A stretch of 62,867 bases of DNA, counting the filler, from Octopus bimaculoides (taxonomy: Eukaryota): NCBI RefSeq assembly GCF_001194135.2. It is 6 parts of 5 records of this genome, joined end to end, with 100 filler letters (N's around TTAATTAATTAA, not from the genome) between each part and the next. Parts side by side here need not be neighbours in the genome. Positions count along the whole stretch, not along the records: positions 46,164 to 53,516 come from NC_069003.1; 5 more parts are not named here. The stretch is one strand, 5' to 3'. Shown piece after piece: positions 46,164 to 53,516 of this stretch. The number at the start of each line of letters is the position of its first letter. The stretch's first letter is position 1. A program made the position numbers and the translations under genes. The notes beneath the pieces were generated by a model that searched no databases, was not told the origin of the DNA, and saw nothing but the letters and a program-made list of their open reading frames with translations.

Positions 46164-47079
46164 TTTCGACACACACACACACACACACTCACTACTGGCG
46201 GGCTGGAACACACTCGCACAGACGGGATGGCACAACGTGAGACATAAGGTATTCGCTATTCACTCGTCATACGCCCCACTAACCCACAATTCCAACCACC
46301 GCCTCACACCGTCCTTGAAATATTTATGGTTCTACAAAAAAAAAAAAGAAAAAAGAACCTTTTCTAATTTCGACACACACACACACACACACGCACACGC
46401 ACACGCACAGTCTTCGTTGTCGTCCTCAAAGCAAAATAAGGCGGAGAAACCGGTCAGCTGAAATAGGTTTCTTGGTCAGTCTCGATGAATAAGAGATCTT
46501 CATGGCTTAAAGATCAGAAATAAAACCTTTCATTGAAAATTGCTTAATGAGATACTCGTCGTCTTAGTTAATGTGAATTTTAAATGAGCTTCGGTTGGGT
46601 GCCGGGTAAAGTGCGTCGTAACGTTAAGGTTTTTTGCATTCTTGTGTTCAATTTCTATTAGGCTGTGGCCATTTAATCATTCCGAGGTCCTCGATCGGTT
46701 GTTGGCGTTGCTATACAGCCCTAGGTCTGTCCTGATTGAGAAGACTTTTGATCCAATTTTCACTCACACACACACAACTATTAAATCAGGCCCTAAAACA
46801 ATGTTTCTCACACCATTTTTTACCTATAGTTCCCTTTGATACTAATTTTACTTGGTTGGACTTTCATAGCCATTCGATGTTTAAGAAATCCCCTTATATT
46901 TTTATAATTGAGTATAATTAGGAATTGTATTAAAATAAAATGATAAATTTATTGCCCTTAAACTTTAACAACAAAATCTTATATACGGACCTCCAAAGGT
47001 CATATGAACCCTCCCAAGGTCGTCTGGACCCCTCACTATTTAATGTCTTTTCCAGTTTCGTTATTATTAAGGGCACTGG

Positions 47080-47345
47080 GGTTCGATGTAATCGACCATG
47101 CTCCCCACAACAAAAAAATTTCAGGTCACGTGCCGAAAGTAGAAAGGATTAAGGCGGCGAGCTGGCAGAATCGTTAGCACGCCGAATTAAATGCTTAGTG
47201 GCATTTCTTTCGGCTTTGTATTCTGAGTACAAATAACACCAAAGTCGACTTAGCCTTTCACCCTTTCAGAATCGATGGAATTTACTAGTCCCCCCTCTAC
47301 CTTTCTCCCAAAATTTCATGCTTTATGCCTATAGTAGAAAATATG
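47080..47345 (+). mobile_element. SINE family C (3' fragment then deleted full copy)
   Basis: AAGGCGGCGAGCTGGCAGAATCGTTAGCACGCC at about 47152. Confidence 0.85.
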
Positions 47346-48617
47346 TTTATTATATATTGGTGGCGTGTGACTTGAGGGAGATTTGGCTGGTATTTTTTAG
47401 CAGGCTGAGGATCATGCGCAGGTTAGCTCGTTATATGCTTGGAGTTATTTTATCAACTGCACATAGCTCCAACGACAATATGTGGACTTGCAGTAATGAT
47501 ATAAAATCTTTATTGCATATCATATAGGGTTTGAGTTGCAGACGACAGACCATAAGACAGCCACTAAAATGTGGTATTTGTTACAGCTCTTTACAGTGAG
47601 TTCAAATCCCGCCTAGGCCGTCTTCCGAGGTCGACTATGAAACATATACAGTACGTGTGTGTACATCATGGTAAGCAACACTTCGCGCTCGTTTAAAAAA
47701 TGTGCGACGTTGTACCTATCCTGCATTTCATTCAAGCAGTCCTGAGCTCAATTTCCACCAGGGTTGTTAAATTTACCTTTCTTCAACCCGGGGTCCATAT
47801 AATAAGGTTTTACTGGGCCTTAAACAGCAGTATCGACTAAAACCCCTTAAGGTGGTGGTCCAGCGTGGCCGCAGTTAAATGACTGAAACGGGAAAATATA
47901 TATATATAAATATAACGTGAGAGAGTTAGGGGTTGGGGGTTCAACCCACTAAGGGATAGTATCTATCCAGTATACTGCTGGGAGGTACCCAATTATTGCT
48001 ACACTAGTGCTATACTAGGTGCAATCAATGGGAGCGGGTAAAATATATATATATATATATATATGATGTGTGTGTGTGTCCAGTTGCGCTTGAACATATT
48101 GCAGCTTTAGTTCACGTGAACGGATTCACAACACCTCAACGGGTTATCGGTTCTTCTACGATTTTATGCCGATGTGAAGAAAAGACCTCAAAAATTCCAC
48201 ATAAACAACAATATGGAATCTTTTTACCTCAAGTAACTTCGGCGGCTATTCCCGTCACCAGCCACAAATAAATAATGTGTGTGCGTGTGCGTGTGCGTGT
48301 GCGTGTGCGTGTGCGTGTGCGTGTGCGTGTGTTACTATGTGTTCTCTAGTCAGATCAAGTATGTTCACAGTATTATCATCATCATCATCATTTAATGTGA
48401 AACTAGTTGAATTCCTTTTATATATTTTCTTATTCTCCCACTTCAAACTTTCCCTTTACTCCTCCTCCTCCAAATATGCAATAACACATTTCTGAATAAT
48501 AATAATAATAATAATAACAACATACTTTGGACTTTCTTTGTTATATATTTAGGATCAACATGTGCTTTCTAATGTCGTTCACAGCGCCAATACACACGCC
48601 ATCGCGCACATATATAT

Positions 48618-48985
48618 GTGCAGGCGTGGCTGTGTAGTAGGAGACCTGCTGGGTTCAGTCCTACTACGTGGCACCTAAGGCAACTGTCGCCTACTACAGC
48701 CTCGGGCCGACCAAAGCCTTGTGAGTGGATTTGATAGACGGAAACTGAAAGAAGCCCGTCATATTATATATATATATATTCTTTTATTCTTTTCAGTCAT
48801 TTGGCTGCGGCCATGCTGGAGCACCGCCTTTAGTCGAACAAATCGACCCCGGAACTTATTCTTTGTAAGCCTAGTACTTATTCTATTGGTTTCTTTTGCC
48901 GAACCGCTAAGTTATGGGGACGTAAACACACCAGCATCGGTTGTCAAGCGATGTTGGGTGGGAGTGACACACACACACACACACA
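48618..48985. mobile_element. SINE module A (+, 48618-48765) joined to module B in inverted orientation (-, 48781-48985)
   Basis: The second part is the reverse complement of module B, including its (TG)n linker. Confidence 0.85.
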
Positions 48986-49214
48986 NNNNNNNNNNNNNNN
49001 NNNNNNNNNNNNNNNNNNNNNNNNNNNNNNNNNNNNNNNNNNNNNNNNNNNNNNNNNGTACTAAGGTACGGAAACGTAAACAAACAATCACCTCAGGACC
49101 TCAACGTAGCAAGATACTATTGATCTCTGCTATGGTGCTGAGTACTCTTAAATCTTTATTACAGGCACGAAGGCCTCATTACGTGCTGAGTACTCTTTTC
49201 CCAACATCCGGCAA

Positions 49215-49895
49215 CTGAAAGGATGAAAGGCGAAGTCGACCTCGGCGGAATATGAACTCAGAACGTAAAGACAGACGAAATACCGCTAAGGATTTCGCCC
49301 AGCGTGCTAACGTTTCTTTATTGCCCACCAACGATTCTGCTTATAAAAATTCTTTTATATTCTGCTAATAAAAATTCTTTTATTGGCCACAAGGGATCAC
49401 ATACAAAACATTAACATACAACATAAAAGACAAAAATAGGACGATACCATGGGTTTTCGCGTGTACACAATGTAATAACAAAAATTGAACAAATTAAAAC
49501 CCCCCAATAGAGTCCAAAGAGCAGAGTTTCTGTCTTTAGCCCTTTAATAATAATAATTCTTTCTACTACAGGCACAAGGCTTGAAATTTTTGGGGAGGGG
49601 ACTAGTGGAATGTGAACTCGCAGCGTAGCGACGGACGAAATGCCGCTAAGCAATTTCGTCCAGCCTGCAAACATTTCTGCCAGCTTTTTTCCTAAATAAT
49701 AATAATAATCTTTTCTACTAAAGGCACAATGCCTGGAATTTGGGGGGAGGGGACCAGTCATTTACATGGACCCCAGTGTTTCACTGGTATTTAATTTATC
49801 AACTCCAAAAGGATAAATGGCAAGTCGATCCCGGTGGAACTTAAAGCTCAGAACGTAAAGCCGGACGAAATACCGTTCAGCCTTTTGTCCGGAGC
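49215..49895 (-). mobile_element. Three SINE family C copies just upstream of the trunk-like exon
   Basis: Reverse-complement matches at about 49215-49315, 49555-49690 and 49710-49895. Confidence 0.8.
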
Positions 49896-50000
49896 ATAAA
49901 AATAATAATTGTAAGAATAATAATAATAATTGTTGTAATAATATTGTTATAATTAAATGAAAGTTTTGTTAAAATTATATTTTAATTAATATATTAATAT

Positions 50001-50027
50001 ATTTTTTCTTTTTTTGTCTCCTTGCAG
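50001..50027 (+). promoter_or_regulatory. 3' splice acceptor immediately before the ATG
   Basis: Polypyrimidine tract ATTTTTTCTTTTTTTGTCTCCTTGCAG|ATG; AG at 50026-50027. Confidence 0.8.
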
Positions 50028-51332
50028 ATGCGATATCTCACACAGTCTCTAATGTTCAGAGTGATACTCTGTCTTATTCTCATACCAACTATCTTAGCTT
50101 ATCCGAAACCGATACTCGTGGAAAAGGCTAACCAGACGATCGTAGTGTTCCATACGGCTCCGTGTCGTCCGTTATCAAGGGACCAACTCCGAAGCCAGCT
50201 GGGAGAGGCTTACGACAAAGGCCGAATGGCTGAGGACGAACAAACGGTGAAGCGAAGCATTGAAGCGGCGACTTCGAACCCTCGTCGAGAAGAACAGTTG
50301 AATGATGCTGACATAGATGATGGTTACTTAAGTGACCAACCTATGAGCAGAAGACGACGTAACTATGGTGATACGGAATTTGGTAGACAAAAATATGACG
50401 ACGACGACGACTATGAAGAAAATGAATACGATGGTGATGACAGTGATTTAGGAGACGAAGACGACGATAGTGATGATGATGATGATCGTGATTACCATGA
50501 CGACGATGATGAGACATTTGATGATAACGATGAAGACGATGATAGTGATGATGATGATGATGATGATGATGGGTTTAAGGATGAAGACGACGATGGCAAT
50601 TTTAAACGTAATAATAATGGTAGAAAGAAAAATAGGAGGAAAACTGGTTCGAACAAGAATGGGCGTCGTCGCCACCGACGCAGGAATCAAAGGATTAGAA
50701 ATTTAGGTGGCGGCAAAATTCGTCGGAAAAGCAGACGAGAACATCTCACGTCTAAACGGCGACATTTTTATTCACAGATCAATCACAAATTGAAACCTCG
50801 CAAAAACAAAAGCAGACTTTCAGCAGATGCCCGCAAAAAGTCCCCCTATCTTAGATCGGGTCTTGTTCGTGGCAAGAGAGACGTCGGCAAATTGAACAAA
50901 CGAAACCAAACTAGAAAAACTGGTCCTTATATCAAAGTAACCATTTCAGTCAAACATCGAGGGCGACAGTTACAGCGTCACAAACGAACTGGTCGTGCAG
51001 CTGAAATGTCAGCCAATTGGCAGTGTGAAATGGAGACCGACTGGAAACGAATGGACGATGGATATTTTCCGCCATATTTACAAACTGGAAAGTGTAAATC
51101 AAAGTCTTGCTTCTTTGATTTCTACAGATGTATTCCCAAAAGATATACGATAAAAGTTCTCAAAAGAGATCCCTTCCGCTGTAACCCAATCCCCACGTTC
51201 GGACAAAACACCACTTACGAAGAAAAATGGATATTTGACAAATATCACGTGACTGTTTGTTGCCAATGTGGTAAAGCGAGACTGAGGACATCGAGACGCC
51301 GTCAAAGCAATCGGCGGTCAAGACCACGTTGA
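50028..51332 (+). CDS. trunk: Trunk/PTTH-family (Noggin-related) secreted cystine-knot growth factor precursor, 434 aa
   Basis: Signal peptide MRYLTQSLMFRVILCLILIPTILA. Prodomain motif CRPLSRDQLRSQLGEAYDKGRM (Trunk C..LS...L...LG.AF...M). Furin site RHKR. C-terminal WQC-x5-W...YFPPYLQTGKC...SCFFDFYRCIPKRYTIKVLKR...C...WIFDKYHVTVCCQC with 8 Cys in Trunk spacing (comparison to insect Trunk from memory). High CpG, varied codons, no stops. Confidence 0.9.
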   Translation: MRYLTQSLMFRVILCLILIPTILAYPKPILVEKANQTIVVFHTAPCRPLSRDQLRSQLGEAYDKGRMAEDEQTVKRSIEAATSNPRREEQLNDADIDDGYLSDQPMSRRRRNYGDTEFGRQKYDDDDDYEENEYDGDDSDLGDEDDDSDDDDDRDYHDDDDETFDDNDEDDDSDDDDDDDDGFKDEDDDGNFKRNNNGRKKNRRKTGSNKNGRRRHRRRNQRIRNLGGGKIRRKSRREHLTSKRRHFYSQINHKLKPRKNKSRLSADARKKSPYLRSGLVRGKRDVGKLNKRNQTRKTGPYIKVTISVKHRGRQLQRHKRTGRAAEMSANWQCEMETDWKRMDDGYFPPYLQTGKCKSKSCFFDFYRCIPKRYTIKVLKRDPFRCNPIPTFGQNTTYEEKWIFDKYHVTVCCQCGKARLRTSRRRQSNRRSRPR

Positions 51333-52124
51333 TGTAACGTCTGTTTTATTACTACTTTCTATTATTTTGCAACATTTATTAAAATGTAATGTTGCCCCGG
51401 GTTTTTTTATTAATTTAAAAAATATATATATACCAAAAAGCAAGCATACCAAATTTAAATAATTTAAAGAAAACAAGGATATGTGTGTGTGTATGTGTGT
51501 GTCTGTATATAAACACTGTGTGAATGGAAATAGATACATATATGTATGTATGTATGTATGTATATTTGTGACAGAAACGGATTGACAGTTGTATAGCGAC
51601 AAGGGGGATAAGGGCGAGAGAAAAGCTTTGAATGTGATGCAAGTGAAACGGAATTGGGCAGAAGACGGTTTGTGATTGTACATAAGCGTCGTGCCTAGAA
51701 ACGTTACATTTGAGTTATTCTTCTTGACATTGGAGAAGAAAACAGGGGACTTAGATCGCAACACAACACTCACAAATGCGGCGCGCGATGGCACACATTT
51801 ATGCGTGTGTGTACGCATGCATATATGCGTGTACATATGTGTCTATTTCTGTTTGTTTGCAATTACACTTTTATATTTAAATACATACAGATGCGTACAT
51901 ATGTATGCATGTGTGTACACAAATGTGTTAATATATATATTATGTATATATAATGTATGTATGTATATATACACGCACCGTTAGACTTATAAATATGTGA
52001 ACTGTAGTGTTTTTCTTTTTAATTGCGTATATGTGACCAAGTGTTTGTACGTATGTGTGTGTGTGTGTATGCAATATATTTATAATGTATTTATACTTAA
52101 ATGTAATGACTGAAAATGGTGTAA

Positions 52125-52130
52125 AATAAA
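52125..52130 (+). terminator. Candidate polyadenylation signal for the trunk-like mRNA (alternative ATTAAA at 51378-51383)
   Basis: AATAAA hexamer 0.8 kb after the stop; no transcript evidence available. Confidence 0.3.
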
Positions 52131-52236
52131 AAGCGTGGCTCGAGAAATATTAACGAAACATAACAGCAAAACAACTAGCATGACCGGAAGACAGTAACCA
52201 GGGTAATACACCAGACTGAGAGCCTCGTAAAATACA

Positions 52237-52278
<42 letters not shown>

Positions 52279-52288
52279 NNNNNNNNNN

Positions 52289-52330
<42 letters not shown>

Positions 52331-52804
52331 GTTGTGGCTATGATAAGCCAGACGACAGCAGTCACAGTGTGTGTGTGATCATGACGGCGGTTCGAGATTT
52401 CGCTTGTTGATTTCTTAACGCCAAATGTCTCCCAATAAAGACAACAATACCTTTTGACATTGTCAAGAGACTTGCTTTGAAACACAGACATATAGCGCCA
52501 CAATTATCATGTTATATTTTACCTTATTATAGTAGTTACCGACACACATATGTCTGCATATATATTTACGTATATATGTATATATATGTATGTATATGTA
52601 TGTATAGAACATACATACATCGACACCTAAGTACAGTTATGTGTTTGTGTGAGAGCGAGAGAAAGAATGAGATTCTGTGTGTACGTCTGTATTTATGTAT
52701 GTATGAATGTATGTATTTATATATATGAATGTTTATATAGGAATATAGGCCGTTGGATGGATTGAAGATAATTAATGGAGTGTATATAAATATATGTGCC
52801 TGGA

Positions 52805-52886
<82 letters not shown>

Positions 52887-53382
52887 AGATTCATTGTTTG
52901 TCTGCGCATGTAATAGCATTTCTGTGTACTTACGTATAATCATGTAAATAGATAAGAATGTATGCGTGAAAAGAGGTGGCAGATTGCTAAATGAAAGGAA
53001 ACACATTTAAGACATACGTTACCACATAAAAATGAAATACAAAATATACAATACAAAATAACATGTTTATAACGGAGTTGTAGTTGACTCCCATTTGTGA
53101 TAAAAAAAAAATGCCGTAATTATTAATAATAGCAGACTTCAAGATACGTACATATATATATATATATGTATGTATGTATATACGATGTATGTACGCAATT
53201 CTTTTTAAAGAAAAGAAACGAGCAAATATATATATATAAAAAAAGACGTATACGAATGTCAAAGAAAAAAAAAGACGATAATGAACATATATACACACAA
53301 TTTGTGGATTAACAAGGCAAGCAATGGTTTCATGTGGAAAACGTCTCCACAGTTGTTCAGGCTTACGACGTTCGATACTAGC

Positions 53383-53432
<50 letters not shown>

Positions 53433-53516
53433 CAAAGAATAAAATATGAAACAACGTATGACTTATTTTGAGAATTATATATGAAAGAAAATGCGTTTCA
53501 ATATCCTAAAGTGGAA

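What the first reader, a model, noticed from the sequence alone, without database searches (positions are those of the whole stretch)
50397..50987. Charge-balanced diblock polyampholyte inserted in the prodomain
Seen (hand count, ORF-track numbering): residues 126-191 have 48 Asp/Glu and 2 basic residues (net about -46); residues 195-322 have 51 Lys/Arg and 3 acidic residues (net about +48). The Asp tract mixes GAT/GAC codons and is punctuated by Tyr and Ser, unlike the pure (GAT)n tracts elsewhere in the window. Inference: the acidic block may neutralise the basic block intramolecularly until convertase cleavage, drive condensation in secretory granules, or control heparan-sulfate or Ca2+ binding and ligand range. 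Tyr residues in acidic context are candidate sulfation sites. I know of no such architecture in described Trunk/PTTH proteins.
Basis: partly seen in the sequence, partly recalled or inferred. Interest (0 to 1): 0.75.

Follow-up and report, generated by a model that had tools for sequence, protein, structure and literature searches.

The report
Giant acid-then-base spacer in octopus Trunk-like precursor
An octopus gene for a secreted Trunk/PTTH-like growth factor carries, between its signal peptide and its active domain, a floppy spacer made of a very acidic stretch followed by an equally basic one. It is real and striking, but it is the enlarged version of a pattern shared by the same protein in snails, clams and worms, and its function is untested.

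Summary
ORF residues 126-191 hold 48 Asp/Glu and 2 Lys/Arg. Residues 195-322 hold 51 Lys/Arg and 3 Asp/Glu.

The ORF (CDS 50028-51332, one exon) is Octopus bimaculoides LOC106874022, named "uncharacterized protein" in RefSeq. Its C-terminal cystine-knot domain has 335 homologues. A profile of them hits Bombyx PTTH at E=2.7e-11, against 0.011 for IL-17A and 0.034 for noggin. The Trunk/PTTH assignment is therefore supported.

The diblock is predicted disordered (pLDDT <50). It lies between multibasic convertase sites, RRRR upstream and RHKR at its end.

It is not unique in kind. In 74 homologues the same linker is a near-neutral polyampholyte, with net charge +0.8 ± 7.7. The acidic residues lie ahead of the basic ones in 63 of 74.

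The octopus version is the largest (63 acidic, 64 basic) and the most charge-segregated by a size-dependent measure (SCD z = -31). Its big Asp block also sits in a different place: downstream of the conserved mid-linker RRRR site, not upstream as in relatives. Part of it is a degenerate GAT/GAC microsatellite.

Acidic and basic counts co-vary across homologues, mostly through linker length.

Function remains inferred. My best reading is a processed, self-neutralising spacer.

The parts
50005..50027 (+). Polypyrimidine tract and ttgcag 3' splice acceptor directly in front of the ATG
   Evidence: Sequence read. The RefSeq model XP_052831940.1 adds 9 residues (MSRSWPLTQ) from an upstream exon and is otherwise identical. 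That exon was not found in the piece.
50028..51332 (+). Complete coding exon, 434 codons plus TGA stop, of Octopus bimaculoides LOC106874022, a Trunk/PTTH-like precursor
   Evidence: ORF. Identical to P0001 and to P0151 = XP_052831940.1.
50028..50099 (+). Predicted signal peptide (MRYLTQSLMFRVILCLILIPTILA)
   Evidence: Hydrophobic N-terminus read from the sequence; helix 2-23 in the model. The cleavage point is inferred; no signal-peptide predictor was run.
50103..50255 (+). Conserved, ordered N-terminal pro-region motif (F..PC.P.S...L...LG.AYD..RMA.D) ending in the dibasic site K75-R76 | S (bases 50250-50255)
   Evidence: A profile of this motif is found in 82 of 157 family sequences. pLDDT is 96-98. 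Drosophila Trunk is cut by furins at K75,R76 in the context KRSS (PMC4640135). KR followed by a small residue occurs within 14 residues after the motif in 24 of 74 homologues.
50283..50360 (+). Short first acidic patch (REEQLNDADIDDGYLSD) followed by the conserved mid-linker multibasic site PMSRRRR (RRRR = 50349-50360)
   Evidence: In 28 other homologues the matching M-x-[RK]3+ site lies at 45-65% of the linker with the main acidic block in front of it. In octopus it lies at 13.5%, with only 9 acidic residues in front.
50397..50594 (+). Acidic block: 66 residues, 41 Asp + 7 Glu, net -46, with Tyr in acidic context (DDDDDYEENEYDGDD, DRDYHDDDD)
   Evidence: Partly a degenerate GAT/GAC microsatellite. 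pLDDT <50. Largest acidic block among the 150 homologues; the next is -25, in Aplysia.
50604..50987 (+). Basic block: 128 residues, 21 Lys + 30 Arg, net +48, not repetitive at the DNA level
   Evidence: Mixed Arg and Lys codons. pLDDT <50.
50670..50681 (+). Internal furin-type site RHRR
   Evidence: R-x-[KR]-R scan.
50868..50879 (+). Internal furin-type site RGKR; it also reads as a Gly-Lys-Arg amidation-type signal
   Evidence: R-x-[KR]-R scan.
50976..50987 (+). Furin-type site RHKR, 12 residues before the first knot cysteine; the presumed final maturation site
   Evidence: 51 of 74 homologues have a multibasic site in the last 25 residues of the linker.
50988..51272 (+). Cystine-knot ligand domain. 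Eight Cys in the octopus protein (333, 356, 361, 368, 385, 411, 412, 414, CDS numbering); six of them are invariant and Cys385 nearly invariant (at least 90%) across the 53-domain alignment, and Cys411 is an extra one.
   Evidence: 335 homologues. Invariant columns. Profile against PDB gives PTTH at E=2.7e-11. pLDDT 86-98. Fold matches to IL-17, noggin and PTTH.
51273..51329 (+). Basic C-terminal tail (KARLRTSRRRQSNRRSRPR, net +10)
   Evidence: Similar basic tails are seen in P0002, P0003, P0006, P0016 and P0027.
51378..51383 (+). Candidate polyadenylation signal ATTAAA, 46 bases after the stop
   Evidence: Pattern scan; not otherwise tested.

Best explanation
The region is the central, intrinsically disordered spacer of the pro-region of an octopus Trunk/PTTH-family ligand precursor (O. 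bimaculoides LOC106874022).

Architecture of the precursor, in order:
- a signal peptide;
- an ordered N-terminal pro-motif ending in K75-R76;
- a short acidic patch and an RRRR site;
- the Asp block (net -46);
- the Lys/Arg block (net +48), which holds RHRR and RGKR and ends in RHKR;
- the cystine knot;
- a basic tail.

Shown here:
- An acid-then-base, nearly neutral, charge-segregated linker is a general trait of this protein family in molluscs, annelids and nemerteans.
- The octopus has the largest version.
- Its Asp block grew out of the small secondary acidic patch downstream of the conserved RRRR site, not out of the main acidic block found upstream of that site in relatives.

Inferred, not shown:
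- The Asp block grew partly by slippage of GAT/GAC repeats.
- The acidic half pairs electrostatically with the basic half in a hairpin-like or self-associating manner. This keeps a roughly 50-charge polycation soluble and stops it binding sulfated glycans, membranes or convertases prematurely in the secretory pathway.
- Proprotein convertases then cut at RRRR, RHRR, RGKR and RHKR. The spacer is removed like a connecting peptide.
- Partial cutting would leave the knot with more or less basic extension, and so could tune matrix retention.
For: Identity:
- Exhaustive HMMER finds 335 homologues, and the window protein itself at 100% identity.
- The RefSeq name and accession come from the cluster look-up.
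- A profile of 53 knot domains hits PTTH chain 5AOQ_L at E=2.7e-11 over the full domain. IL-17A scores 0.011 and noggin 0.034.
- Two relatives are named 'trunk' by their sources.
- The K75-R76|S site matches the Drosophila Trunk furin site K75,R76 in KRSS (PMC4640135).

Disorder and flanking order:
- pLDDT is below 50 across about residues 100-310 of the 434-residue protein (50-60 in the flanking blocks).
- pLDDT is 96-98 for the N-motif and 86-98 for the knot.

Convertase sites: four R-x-[KR]-R sites were found.

Family trait:
- In 74 linkers the median composition is 18% acidic and 19.5% basic, and the net charge is +0.8 ± 7.7.
- The acidic centre lies ahead of the basic centre in 63 of 74 (p=4e-10).
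- SCD z is below -2 in 58% of linkers; the octopus, at -31, is the extreme.
- Family median kappa is 0.31; the octopus linker scores 0.48 and ranks 4th of 74.

Relocation: counts before and after the M-RRRR site are 9 acidic before and 54 acidic / 56 basic after in octopus. In relatives they run from 18-50 acidic before and 3-20 after.

Co-variation: Spearman 0.74, partial 0.47. Independent contrasts give 0.74 and partial 0.27, p=0.02.

Slippage signature in the Asp block only.

The segment 112-320 has net charge +2.

Established background: charge segregation drives compaction and coacervation of polyampholytes (review PMC7503639). A charge-balance hypothesis exists for anionic propieces of defensins and cathelicidins (PMC4571063).
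Against: - No experimental or transcript-level data were available here. Cleavage at any site is inferred from motifs alone.
- The balance of 63 against 64 may be coincidence plus shared composition. The acidic and basic fractions are uncorrelated across homologues (rho 0.00). The spread of net charge is no tighter than in a length-binned shuffle (P=0.23).
- The independent-contrast result rests on a noisy gene tree built from about 120 aligned residues.
- The acidic block does not neutralise the precursor as a whole, which stays at +18. The knot plus tail carry +14.
- In Drosophila the C-terminal fragment alone is active (PMC6303783), so the spacer may be dispensable.
- No other cephalopod sequence could be examined, so it is unknown whether the expansion is conserved or a recent, possibly polymorphic, event.
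Confidence: 0.55

Rival explanations
1. Neutral low-complexity growth. The Asp tract is a by-product of trinucleotide slippage in a microsatellite-rich genome. It is tolerated because the spacer is disordered and discarded, and the near-equality with the basic block has no functional meaning.
For: A degenerate period-3 array at 50471-50571, a (GAC)5 run and a (GAT)8 run lie inside the block. The piece is full of microsatellites, including an (ATC)5.7 array at 48375-48391. The nearest homologues (60% identical knot; Solemya and an unnamed relative) have no large diblock. Acidic and basic fractions are uncorrelated, and the net-charge spread is no tighter than the shuffled null.
Against: The basic block, also far above the family median (64 basic residues against 23), shows no repeat structure and uses mixed codons, so slippage does not explain it. 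Acid-before-base order and near neutrality recur in 63 of 74 homologues across phyla. Acidic and basic counts co-vary after controlling for other residues, including in independent contrasts. The Asp tract is interrupted by Tyr, Ser, Glu and Gly, so it is old enough to have accumulated substitutions.
Confidence: 0.3
2. Granin-like or Ca2+-dependent sorting module (one of the reader's options). The Asp block binds Ca2+ at low affinity and, with the basic block, drives condensation of the precursor into dense-core granules for regulated release.
For: High charge segregation (kappa about 0.5, SCD -35.9) is the sequence property that favours self-coacervation (PMC7503639). Asp-rich tracts as low-affinity Ca2+ binders is my own background knowledge. 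The oyster paper describes Trunk/PTTH homologues expressed in the visceral ganglia (PMC8398477).
Against: Nothing in the sequence tests Ca2+ binding or granule sorting. Tissue of expression is unknown. The oyster paralogues that carry a long pro-peptide are expressed broadly rather than specifically in ganglia. Most homologues have much weaker blocks.
Confidence: 0.12
3. The diblock stays on the active ligand. If activation is by the N-proximal cut only (K75-R76 or RRRR, as at K75,R76 in Drosophila Trunk), the secreted ligand carries the diblock. The diblock would then regulate receptor or matrix binding, for example with the acidic block masking the basic tail or mimicking heparan sulfate.
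For: The conserved KR|S site is at the same position as the functionally critical Drosophila site. The knot has a +10 basic tail that an acidic block could mask.
Against: Three further furin-type sites lie in the basic block, one of them 12 residues before the first knot cysteine. A multibasic site directly before the knot is present in 51 of 74 homologues.
Confidence: 0.12
4. The host protein is an IL-17-like cytokine or a noggin-like BMP antagonist rather than a Trunk/PTTH ligand, so comparison with Trunk prodomains is misplaced.
For: Pfam IL17 is the best Pfam hit (E=0.015 for the full protein, 0.00078 for the domain) and is hit by 43 of 53 family members; Noggin is hit by 36 of 53. Foldseek ranks IL-17F and noggin just above PTTH by E-value.
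Against: All of the window protein's Pfam scores are below the gathering thresholds: 16-20 bits against 24 for IL17, and 11-16 against 24.1 for Noggin. The family profile matches PTTH nine orders of magnitude better than IL-17A or noggin, and over the whole domain. The best target-normalised TM-score among the E <= 0.001 matches is to PTTH, 0.67. Pfam appears to have no Trunk/PTTH model, since none was hit.
Confidence: 0.08

Closest known systems
Trunk / PTTH cystine-knot ligands of the receptor tyrosine kinase Torso (Drosophila Trunk; Bombyx PTTH, PDB 5AOQ)
   Same: Both have a signal peptide, a pro-region and a C-terminal cystine knot. The profile match to PTTH is E=2.7e-11 over the whole domain. 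A dibasic K75-R76|S site sits where Drosophila Trunk is cut by furins. Multiple cleavage sites are present, as described for Trunk.
   Different: The pro-region linker is 259 residues long, with a -46 block followed by a +48 block. Nothing like this is mentioned in the Trunk/PTTH papers I read. Binding to Torso is untested. The gene is unnamed in RefSeq.
Lophotrochozoan Trunk-like proteins: Aplysia LOC101857133, Haliotis LOC124140837, Patella LOC126819722, 'trunk' of Plakobranchus and Elysia, and Owenia, Lineus and Solemya proteins
   Same: They share the N-terminal pro-motif, mid-linker M-RRRR site, acid-then-base linker, near-zero linker charge, knot and basic tail.
   Different: Their main acidic block lies upstream of the M-RRRR site and reaches at most net -25. 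The octopus block lies downstream and reaches -46, with 54 acidic and 56 basic residues after the site.
Charge-balanced propeptides of cationic host-defence peptides (alpha-defensins, cathelicidins; 'charge balance hypothesis')
   Same: An anionic pro-segment offsets a cationic segment in the same secreted precursor until proteolysis, and the two charges are reported to co-vary in evolution (PMC4571063).
   Different: Here the cationic partner is itself part of the spacer, not the mature product. The precursor as a whole stays at +18, and the mature knot plus tail are not neutralised. There is no homology.
Strongly charge-segregated polyampholyte IDRs (model (Glu-Lys)25 diblocks; Ddx4 N-terminus)
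   Same: High fraction of charged residues (0.53), near-zero net charge and high kappa (about 0.5), the regime in which hairpin-like compaction or self-coacervation is expected.
   Different: Those are cytoplasmic or nuclear, or synthetic. This one is in a secretory precursor and flanked by convertase sites. Its behaviour has not been measured.
Proinsulin-type connecting peptides
   Same: A disordered segment bounded by basic convertase sites lies between two ordered parts, both predicted with high confidence.
   Different: It is not shown that the N-terminal piece stays attached to the knot. The cysteine-parity test was inconclusive. There is no homology.

Membership tests
Trunk/PTTH ligand family | C-terminal cystine-knot domain homologous to PTTH/Trunk, with conserved Cys spacing | tested here: met
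   The single sequence hits PDB chain 5AOQ_L at E=0.083. A profile of 53 homologous domains hits it at E=2.7e-11, profile positions 3-89 against chain residues 14-100. Foldseek TM-score normalised to the target is 0.67.
Trunk/PTTH ligand family | Secreted precursor: signal peptide, N-terminal pro-region, and basic proteolytic site(s) before the knot | tested here: met
   A hydrophobic N-terminus and four R-x-[KR]-R sites, including RHKR 12 residues before the first knot Cys. Motif level only; no cleavage data.
Trunk/PTTH ligand family | N-proximal dibasic furin site equivalent to Drosophila Trunk K75,R76 (KRSS) | tested here: inconclusive
   The octopus has TVK75R76|SI, directly after a conserved motif, and the Drosophila site is known from PMC4640135. 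No Drosophila sequence was aligned here, so homology of the sites is not shown.
Trunk/PTTH ligand family | Activates the receptor tyrosine kinase Torso | not testable with these tools
   Needs a binding or signalling assay, and identification of an octopus Torso orthologue.
Trunk/PTTH ligand family | Groups with bona fide arthropod Trunk in a phylogeny that includes noggin, noggin-like and IL-17 | not tested
   The homologue library carries no names. Only two relatives are named 'trunk' by their depositors, which is automatic annotation.
Interleukin-17 (Pfam PF06083) | Score at or above the Pfam gathering threshold (24 bits) | tested here: not met
   16.1 bits for the full protein and 20.2 bits for the domain. 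Fold resemblance exists, with E about 1e-4.
Noggin (Pfam PF05806) | Score at or above the Pfam gathering threshold (24.1 bits) | tested here: not met
   11.1 bits and 15.8 bits. The profile against noggin chain 1M4U gives E=0.034, covering only part of the domain.
Charge-neutralised propeptides (defensin/cathelicidin type) | The anionic propiece offsets the charge of the cationic mature peptide, so the precursor is near neutral | tested here: not met
   The precursor has net +18 and the knot plus tail +14. The acidic block offsets the basic half of the spacer only; the segment 112-320 has net +2.
Strong, charge-segregated polyampholyte IDR | Fraction of charged residues above 0.35, net charge near 0, high kappa or strongly negative SCD, predicted disorder | tested here: met
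   Fraction of charged residues 0.53, net charge per residue +0.01, kappa about 0.52. SCD -35.9, z = -31. pLDDT below 50.

The most novel reading that the evidence does not exclude
The acid-then-base spacer is a conserved functional module of lophotrochozoan Trunk-like precursors. It would be a self-neutralising connecting peptide whose two halves are separated or released by convertase cuts, and which controls how, where and in what form the ligand leaves the cell (secretory-pathway condensation, matrix retention, range). Octopus would then have relocated and amplified this module about four-fold. That would give a natural, extreme diblock polyampholyte in a secreted growth-factor precursor.
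Probability: 0.2. Interest if true: 0.65.

Novelty: new variant of a known kind. Interest (0 to 1): 0.4.

Why it matters
Trunk/Torso signalling is a textbook case in which ligand processing and release, not transcription, set where a receptor is activated. The role of the Trunk pro-region is still debated (PMC6303783).

A pro-region linker whose charge pattern (acid first, base second, near-zero net) is kept across phyla, while its sequence and length drift, would point to an electrostatic mechanism in ligand handling. It would also give a ready set of natural variants to test, from about 20 to about 64 charges per side.

For the physics of disordered proteins, the octopus spacer is a rare natural near-diblock in the secretory pathway (fraction of charged residues 0.53, net charge about 0, kappa about 0.5).

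If the expansion is neutral, the finding is only a curiosity of a repeat-rich genome.

Tried and rejected
- Word-indexed homology search with the knot domain alone found nothing, not even the protein itself.
- With the full protein it found 4 hits.
- With a 48-sequence alignment it again found 4 hits, because low-complexity words filled the candidate list. No Octopus sinensis or vulgaris, squid or Nautilus orthologue was obtained.
- An exact look-up of the 434-residue product found no contig.
- The two closest unnamed relatives come from run SRR12008146 and assembly ERZ24900295. A literature search for those accessions and for the gene and protein ids found nothing, so their species are unknown.
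- The supplements of two mollusc neuropeptide papers held no usable Trunk/PTTH sequences.
- I tested whether the conserved pro-region Cys pairs with an odd knot Cys, which would make the spacer a true connecting peptide. The commonest pattern is 7 knot Cys plus 1 pro Cys. The octopus group has 8 plus 1.
- The upstream exon encoding MSRSWPLTQ is not in the piece.
- Antisense and out-of-frame ORFs across the tract (50448-50690 on the minus strand, poly-Ile; 50470-50706 on the plus strand, poly-Met) are by-products of the GAT repeat and were rejected as genes.
- Gly-basic-basic amidation-type motifs in the basic block (three seen by eye, including SPYLRSGLVR-GKR) are about what I estimate its composition would give by chance (own rough estimate of 1.4-2, not computed). 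I did not pursue them as neuropeptides.
- Fold search could not separate IL-17, noggin and PTTH. Only the sequence profile did.
Full report
1. WHAT IS IN THE SEQUENCE

The piece 46164-53516 is AT-rich eukaryotic DNA. It is crowded with (AC)n, (AT)n and (TATG)n microsatellites and has two N gaps, at 48986-49057 and 52279-52288. It holds one long ORF on the + strand, 50022-51332.

The tool's TTG start is an artefact. The real ATG is at 50028, directly after a polypyrimidine tract and ttgcag, a textbook 3' splice acceptor. The whole 434-codon coding sequence therefore lies in one exon.

- Residues 126-191 (50397-50594) hold 41 Asp, 7 Glu, 1 Lys and 1 Arg.
- Residues 195-322 (50604-50987) hold 21 Lys, 30 Arg, 2 Asp and 1 Glu.

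Other details of the two blocks:
- The Asp codons are 27 GAT and 14 GAC, and the tract contains 3 Tyr and 3 Ser.
- Tandem Repeats Finder sees a degenerate period-3 array at 50471-50571 (71% matches) and a (GAC)5 run at 50397-50411.
- It sees nothing in the basic block, which uses six Arg codons and both Lys codons.

The segregation of charge is far beyond chance:
- Sequence charge decoration (SCD) of the 259-residue linker is -35.9. Shuffles of the same residues give -2.1 ± 1.1, so z = -31.

2. WHAT THE PROTEIN IS

An exhaustive HMMER search with the C-terminal 107 residues found 335 homologues; 151 of them have E <= 1e-10. The window protein itself came back at 100% identity.

The cluster look-up identifies it as 'uncharacterized protein LOC106874022 [Octopus bimaculoides]', XP_052831940.1. 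That model is identical except for nine extra N-terminal residues from an upstream exon. This agrees with the splice acceptor seen in the DNA.

Named relatives:
- Gastropods: Aplysia, Haliotis, Patella, Pomacea, Elysia, Plakobranchus.
- Bivalves: Solemya, Mactra.
- An annelid, Owenia, and a nemertean, Lineus.
- Two of them are called 'trunk' by their depositors.

Pfam gives only sub-threshold IL17 and Noggin hits. A profile of 53 family knot domains gives a clearer answer:
- Bombyx PTTH (PDB 5AOQ_L): E=2.7e-11, across the whole domain.
- IL-17A: E=0.011.
- Noggin: E=0.034.

Fold search of the AlphaFold model places IL-17F/A, noggin and PTTH at similar E-values, 1e-4 to 1e-3. The best target-normalised TM-score among those matches, 0.67, is to PTTH.

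Trunk is known to be widespread outside insects, including in molluscs (PMC6660194; PMC6425005). Oyster has four Trunk/PTTH paralogues, two of them with an additional pro-peptide that carries dibasic sites (PMC8398477).

Torso binding is untested.

3. ANATOMY OF THE PRECURSOR

In CDS numbering (ORF-track numbering minus 2):

| Residues | Feature |
|---|---|
| 1-24 | Signal peptide |
| about 26-76 | Conserved pro-region motif F..PC.P.S...L...(M/L)G.A(F/Y)D..RMA.D, ending in TVK75R76\|S |
| 86-102 | Short acidic patch |
| 106-111 | PMSRRRR site |
| 124-189 | Asp block |
| 193-320 | Basic block, holding RHRR (215-218), RGKR (281-284) and, at its end, RHKR (317-320) |
| 321-415 | Cystine knot |
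| 416-434 | Basic tail, net +10 |

- A profile of the N-terminal motif finds it in 82 of 157 family sequences.
- AlphaFold gives pLDDT of 96-98 for the N-motif and 86-98 for the knot.
- pLDDT is below 50 for about residues 100-310, so the diblock is predicted disordered.
- In Drosophila, Trunk is cut by furins before secretion, and the critical site is K75,R76 in the context KRSS (PMC4640135). The octopus K75-R76|S site fits that description, but I did not align a fly sequence.

4. IS THE DIBLOCK UNIQUE?

No, not in kind. I took the 74 homologues that have both the N-motif and the knot and analysed the linker between them:
- Median length is 118 residues, with 18% acidic and 19.5% basic.
- Net charge is +0.8 ± 7.7.
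- The mean position of acidic residues lies ahead of that of basic residues in 63 of 74 (Wilcoxon p=4e-10).
- Charge is significantly segregated (SCD z < -2) in 58%.
- Family median kappa is 0.31. Three homologues reach 0.51-0.53, against 0.48 for the octopus linker.

What is special in the octopus is size and position.
- It has the most acidic (63) and most basic (64) residues of all 74.
- It has the largest single acidic block of 150 homologues, -46; the next is -25, in Aplysia.
- It has by far the most negative SCD.
- In the 28 other homologues with a recognisable M-x-[RK]3+ site, that site lies at 45-65% of the linker. Nearly all of them have 11-50 acidic residues before it and 2-20 after.
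- In the octopus the site lies at 13.5%, with 9 acidic residues before it and 54 acidic plus 56 basic after it.

The octopus Asp block is therefore not the family's main acidic block grown larger. It is an expansion of the small secondary acidic patch that several relatives carry just after the RRRR site, for example DLEEGDIDDADN in P0006 and DDFEEDELVDDIDDSD in P0016. 'Inserted' is a fair word for it.

The closest relatives available have no large diblock. These are Solemya velum and an unnamed sequence, each about 60-70% identical in the knot. The expansion is therefore specific to a lineage that includes the octopus. How deep that lineage goes I cannot say.

5. DO THE BLOCKS CO-VARY?

- Acidic and basic counts correlate (Spearman 0.74). 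Each also correlates with the number of other residues (0.70 and 0.72).
- The partial correlation controlling for other residues is 0.47 (p=2e-5).
- Independent contrasts on a neighbour-joining gene tree give r=0.74 and partial r=0.27 (p=0.02).
- On the other side, acidic and basic fractions are uncorrelated (rho=0.00). The spread of net charge is no tighter than when basic fractions are shuffled among linkers of similar length (P=0.23).

My reading is that the blocks do not vary independently, so the refutation condition fails. Most of the co-variation is 'both scale with linker length at about 18-19% each'. Evidence for active charge compensation beyond that is weak.

6. MECHANISM

Shown:
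- A disordered, strongly charge-segregated, net-neutral spacer.
- Four furin-type motifs around and inside it.
- Conservation of the charge pattern, though not of the sequence, across phyla.

Inferred:
- The two halves attract each other. Charge-segregated polyampholytes compact into hairpin-like states or self-associate (PMC7503639).
- This would mask a polycation that could otherwise stick to sulfated glycans or membranes, or occupy convertases. The Trunk paper itself used a polyarginine compound as a potent competitive furin inhibitor.
- Convertase cuts then remove the spacer.

The idea resembles the 'charge balance hypothesis' for anionic propieces of defensins and cathelicidins (PMC4571063), with one clear difference. 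Here the acidic block balances the basic half of the spacer (segment 112-320 has net +2), not the mature ligand. The knot plus tail keep +14 and the whole precursor +18.

Tyr in acidic context (DIDDGYLSD, DDDDDYEENEYDGDD, DRDYHDDDD) fits what I know of tyrosine-sulfation site preferences. Tyr is the only neutral residue of the eight tested that is clearly over-represented in acidic context in the family's linkers (z=2.9). This is suggestive, not proof.

The main rival is that the Asp tract is a neutral slippage product in a discarded region. The repeat signature supports this for the acidic half. It does not explain the equally enlarged, non-repetitive basic half, nor the family-wide polarity.

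7. VERDICT

- The family assignment is supported.
- 'Unique architecture' is not supported in kind but is supported in degree and position.
- The functional proposals remain open.

I rate it a new variant of a known kind, of moderate interest.

The most useful by-product is the family-level result. Lophotrochozoan Trunk-like precursors share an ordered N-terminal pro-motif and an acid-then-base, near-neutral, convertase-punctuated linker. I did not find this described in the papers I could search.

Noticed in passing
window 50103-50255: A conserved pro-region motif (F..PC.P.S...L...MG.AFD..RMA.D) with a Cys conserved in at least 90% of aligned relatives is predicted at pLDDT 96-98, as confidently as the knot itself. 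It may dock on the knot, or be disulfide-linked to it. If so, the spacer would be a true connecting peptide.
   Followed up: partly
window 51273-51329: The mature domain ends in a strongly basic tail (KARLRTSRRRQSNRRSRPR, net +10 in 19 residues). Similar tails occur in many homologues. It looks like a matrix- or heparin-binding tail and is not neutralised by the acidic block.
   Followed up: partly
window 50850-50879: SPYLRSGLVR-GKR, preceded by RKK, has the form of an amidated-peptide precursor site (Gly-Lys-Arg). Two more Gly-basic-basic motifs lie in the basic block. By my rough estimate (not computed) this is about what its composition would give by chance.
   Followed up: partly
window 51258-51269: The octopus knot has an extra cysteine (VCCQC) compared with the usual V.C.C. 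This makes 8 knot Cys plus 1 pro-region Cys, an odd total. A sizeable subgroup of homologues shares this pattern.
   Followed up: partly
window 50448-50706, both strands: Two long ORFs overlap the Asp tract in other frames: poly-Ile on the minus strand and poly-Met on the plus strand. They are by-products of the GAT repeat, not genes.
   Followed up: yes
window 48279-48331 and 48375-48391: A perfect (GTGTGC)8.8 array and, close by, an (ATC)5.7 array, which is GAT on the other strand. Non-coding GAT-type microsatellites therefore occur near the gene, consistent with a slippage origin for part of the Asp tract.
   Followed up: no
window 49334-49383: A 25-base tandem duplication (ATTCTGCTAATAAAAATTCTTTTAT x2, 96% matches) lies about 650 bases upstream of the coding exon, in the presumed intron.
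   Followed up: no
window 48986-49057 and 52279-52288: Two assembly gaps (runs of N). The second interrupts an (AT)n array. Neither touches the coding exon.
   Followed up: yes
proteins P0027, P0166, P0167, P0169 (Haliotis isoforms): Abalone isoforms differ only in the N-terminus (alternative first exons), like the octopus RefSeq model. The acid-base linker is nearly identical between Haliotis rufescens and H. asinina (about 91-93% identity overall), which hints at constraint on the linker in that genus.
   Followed up: partly
loci L001 (run SRR12008146) and L002 (assembly ERZ24900295): The two unnamed closest relatives are each encoded without an interruption on their contigs, single-exon like the octopus gene. 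Their species could not be determined.
   Followed up: partly
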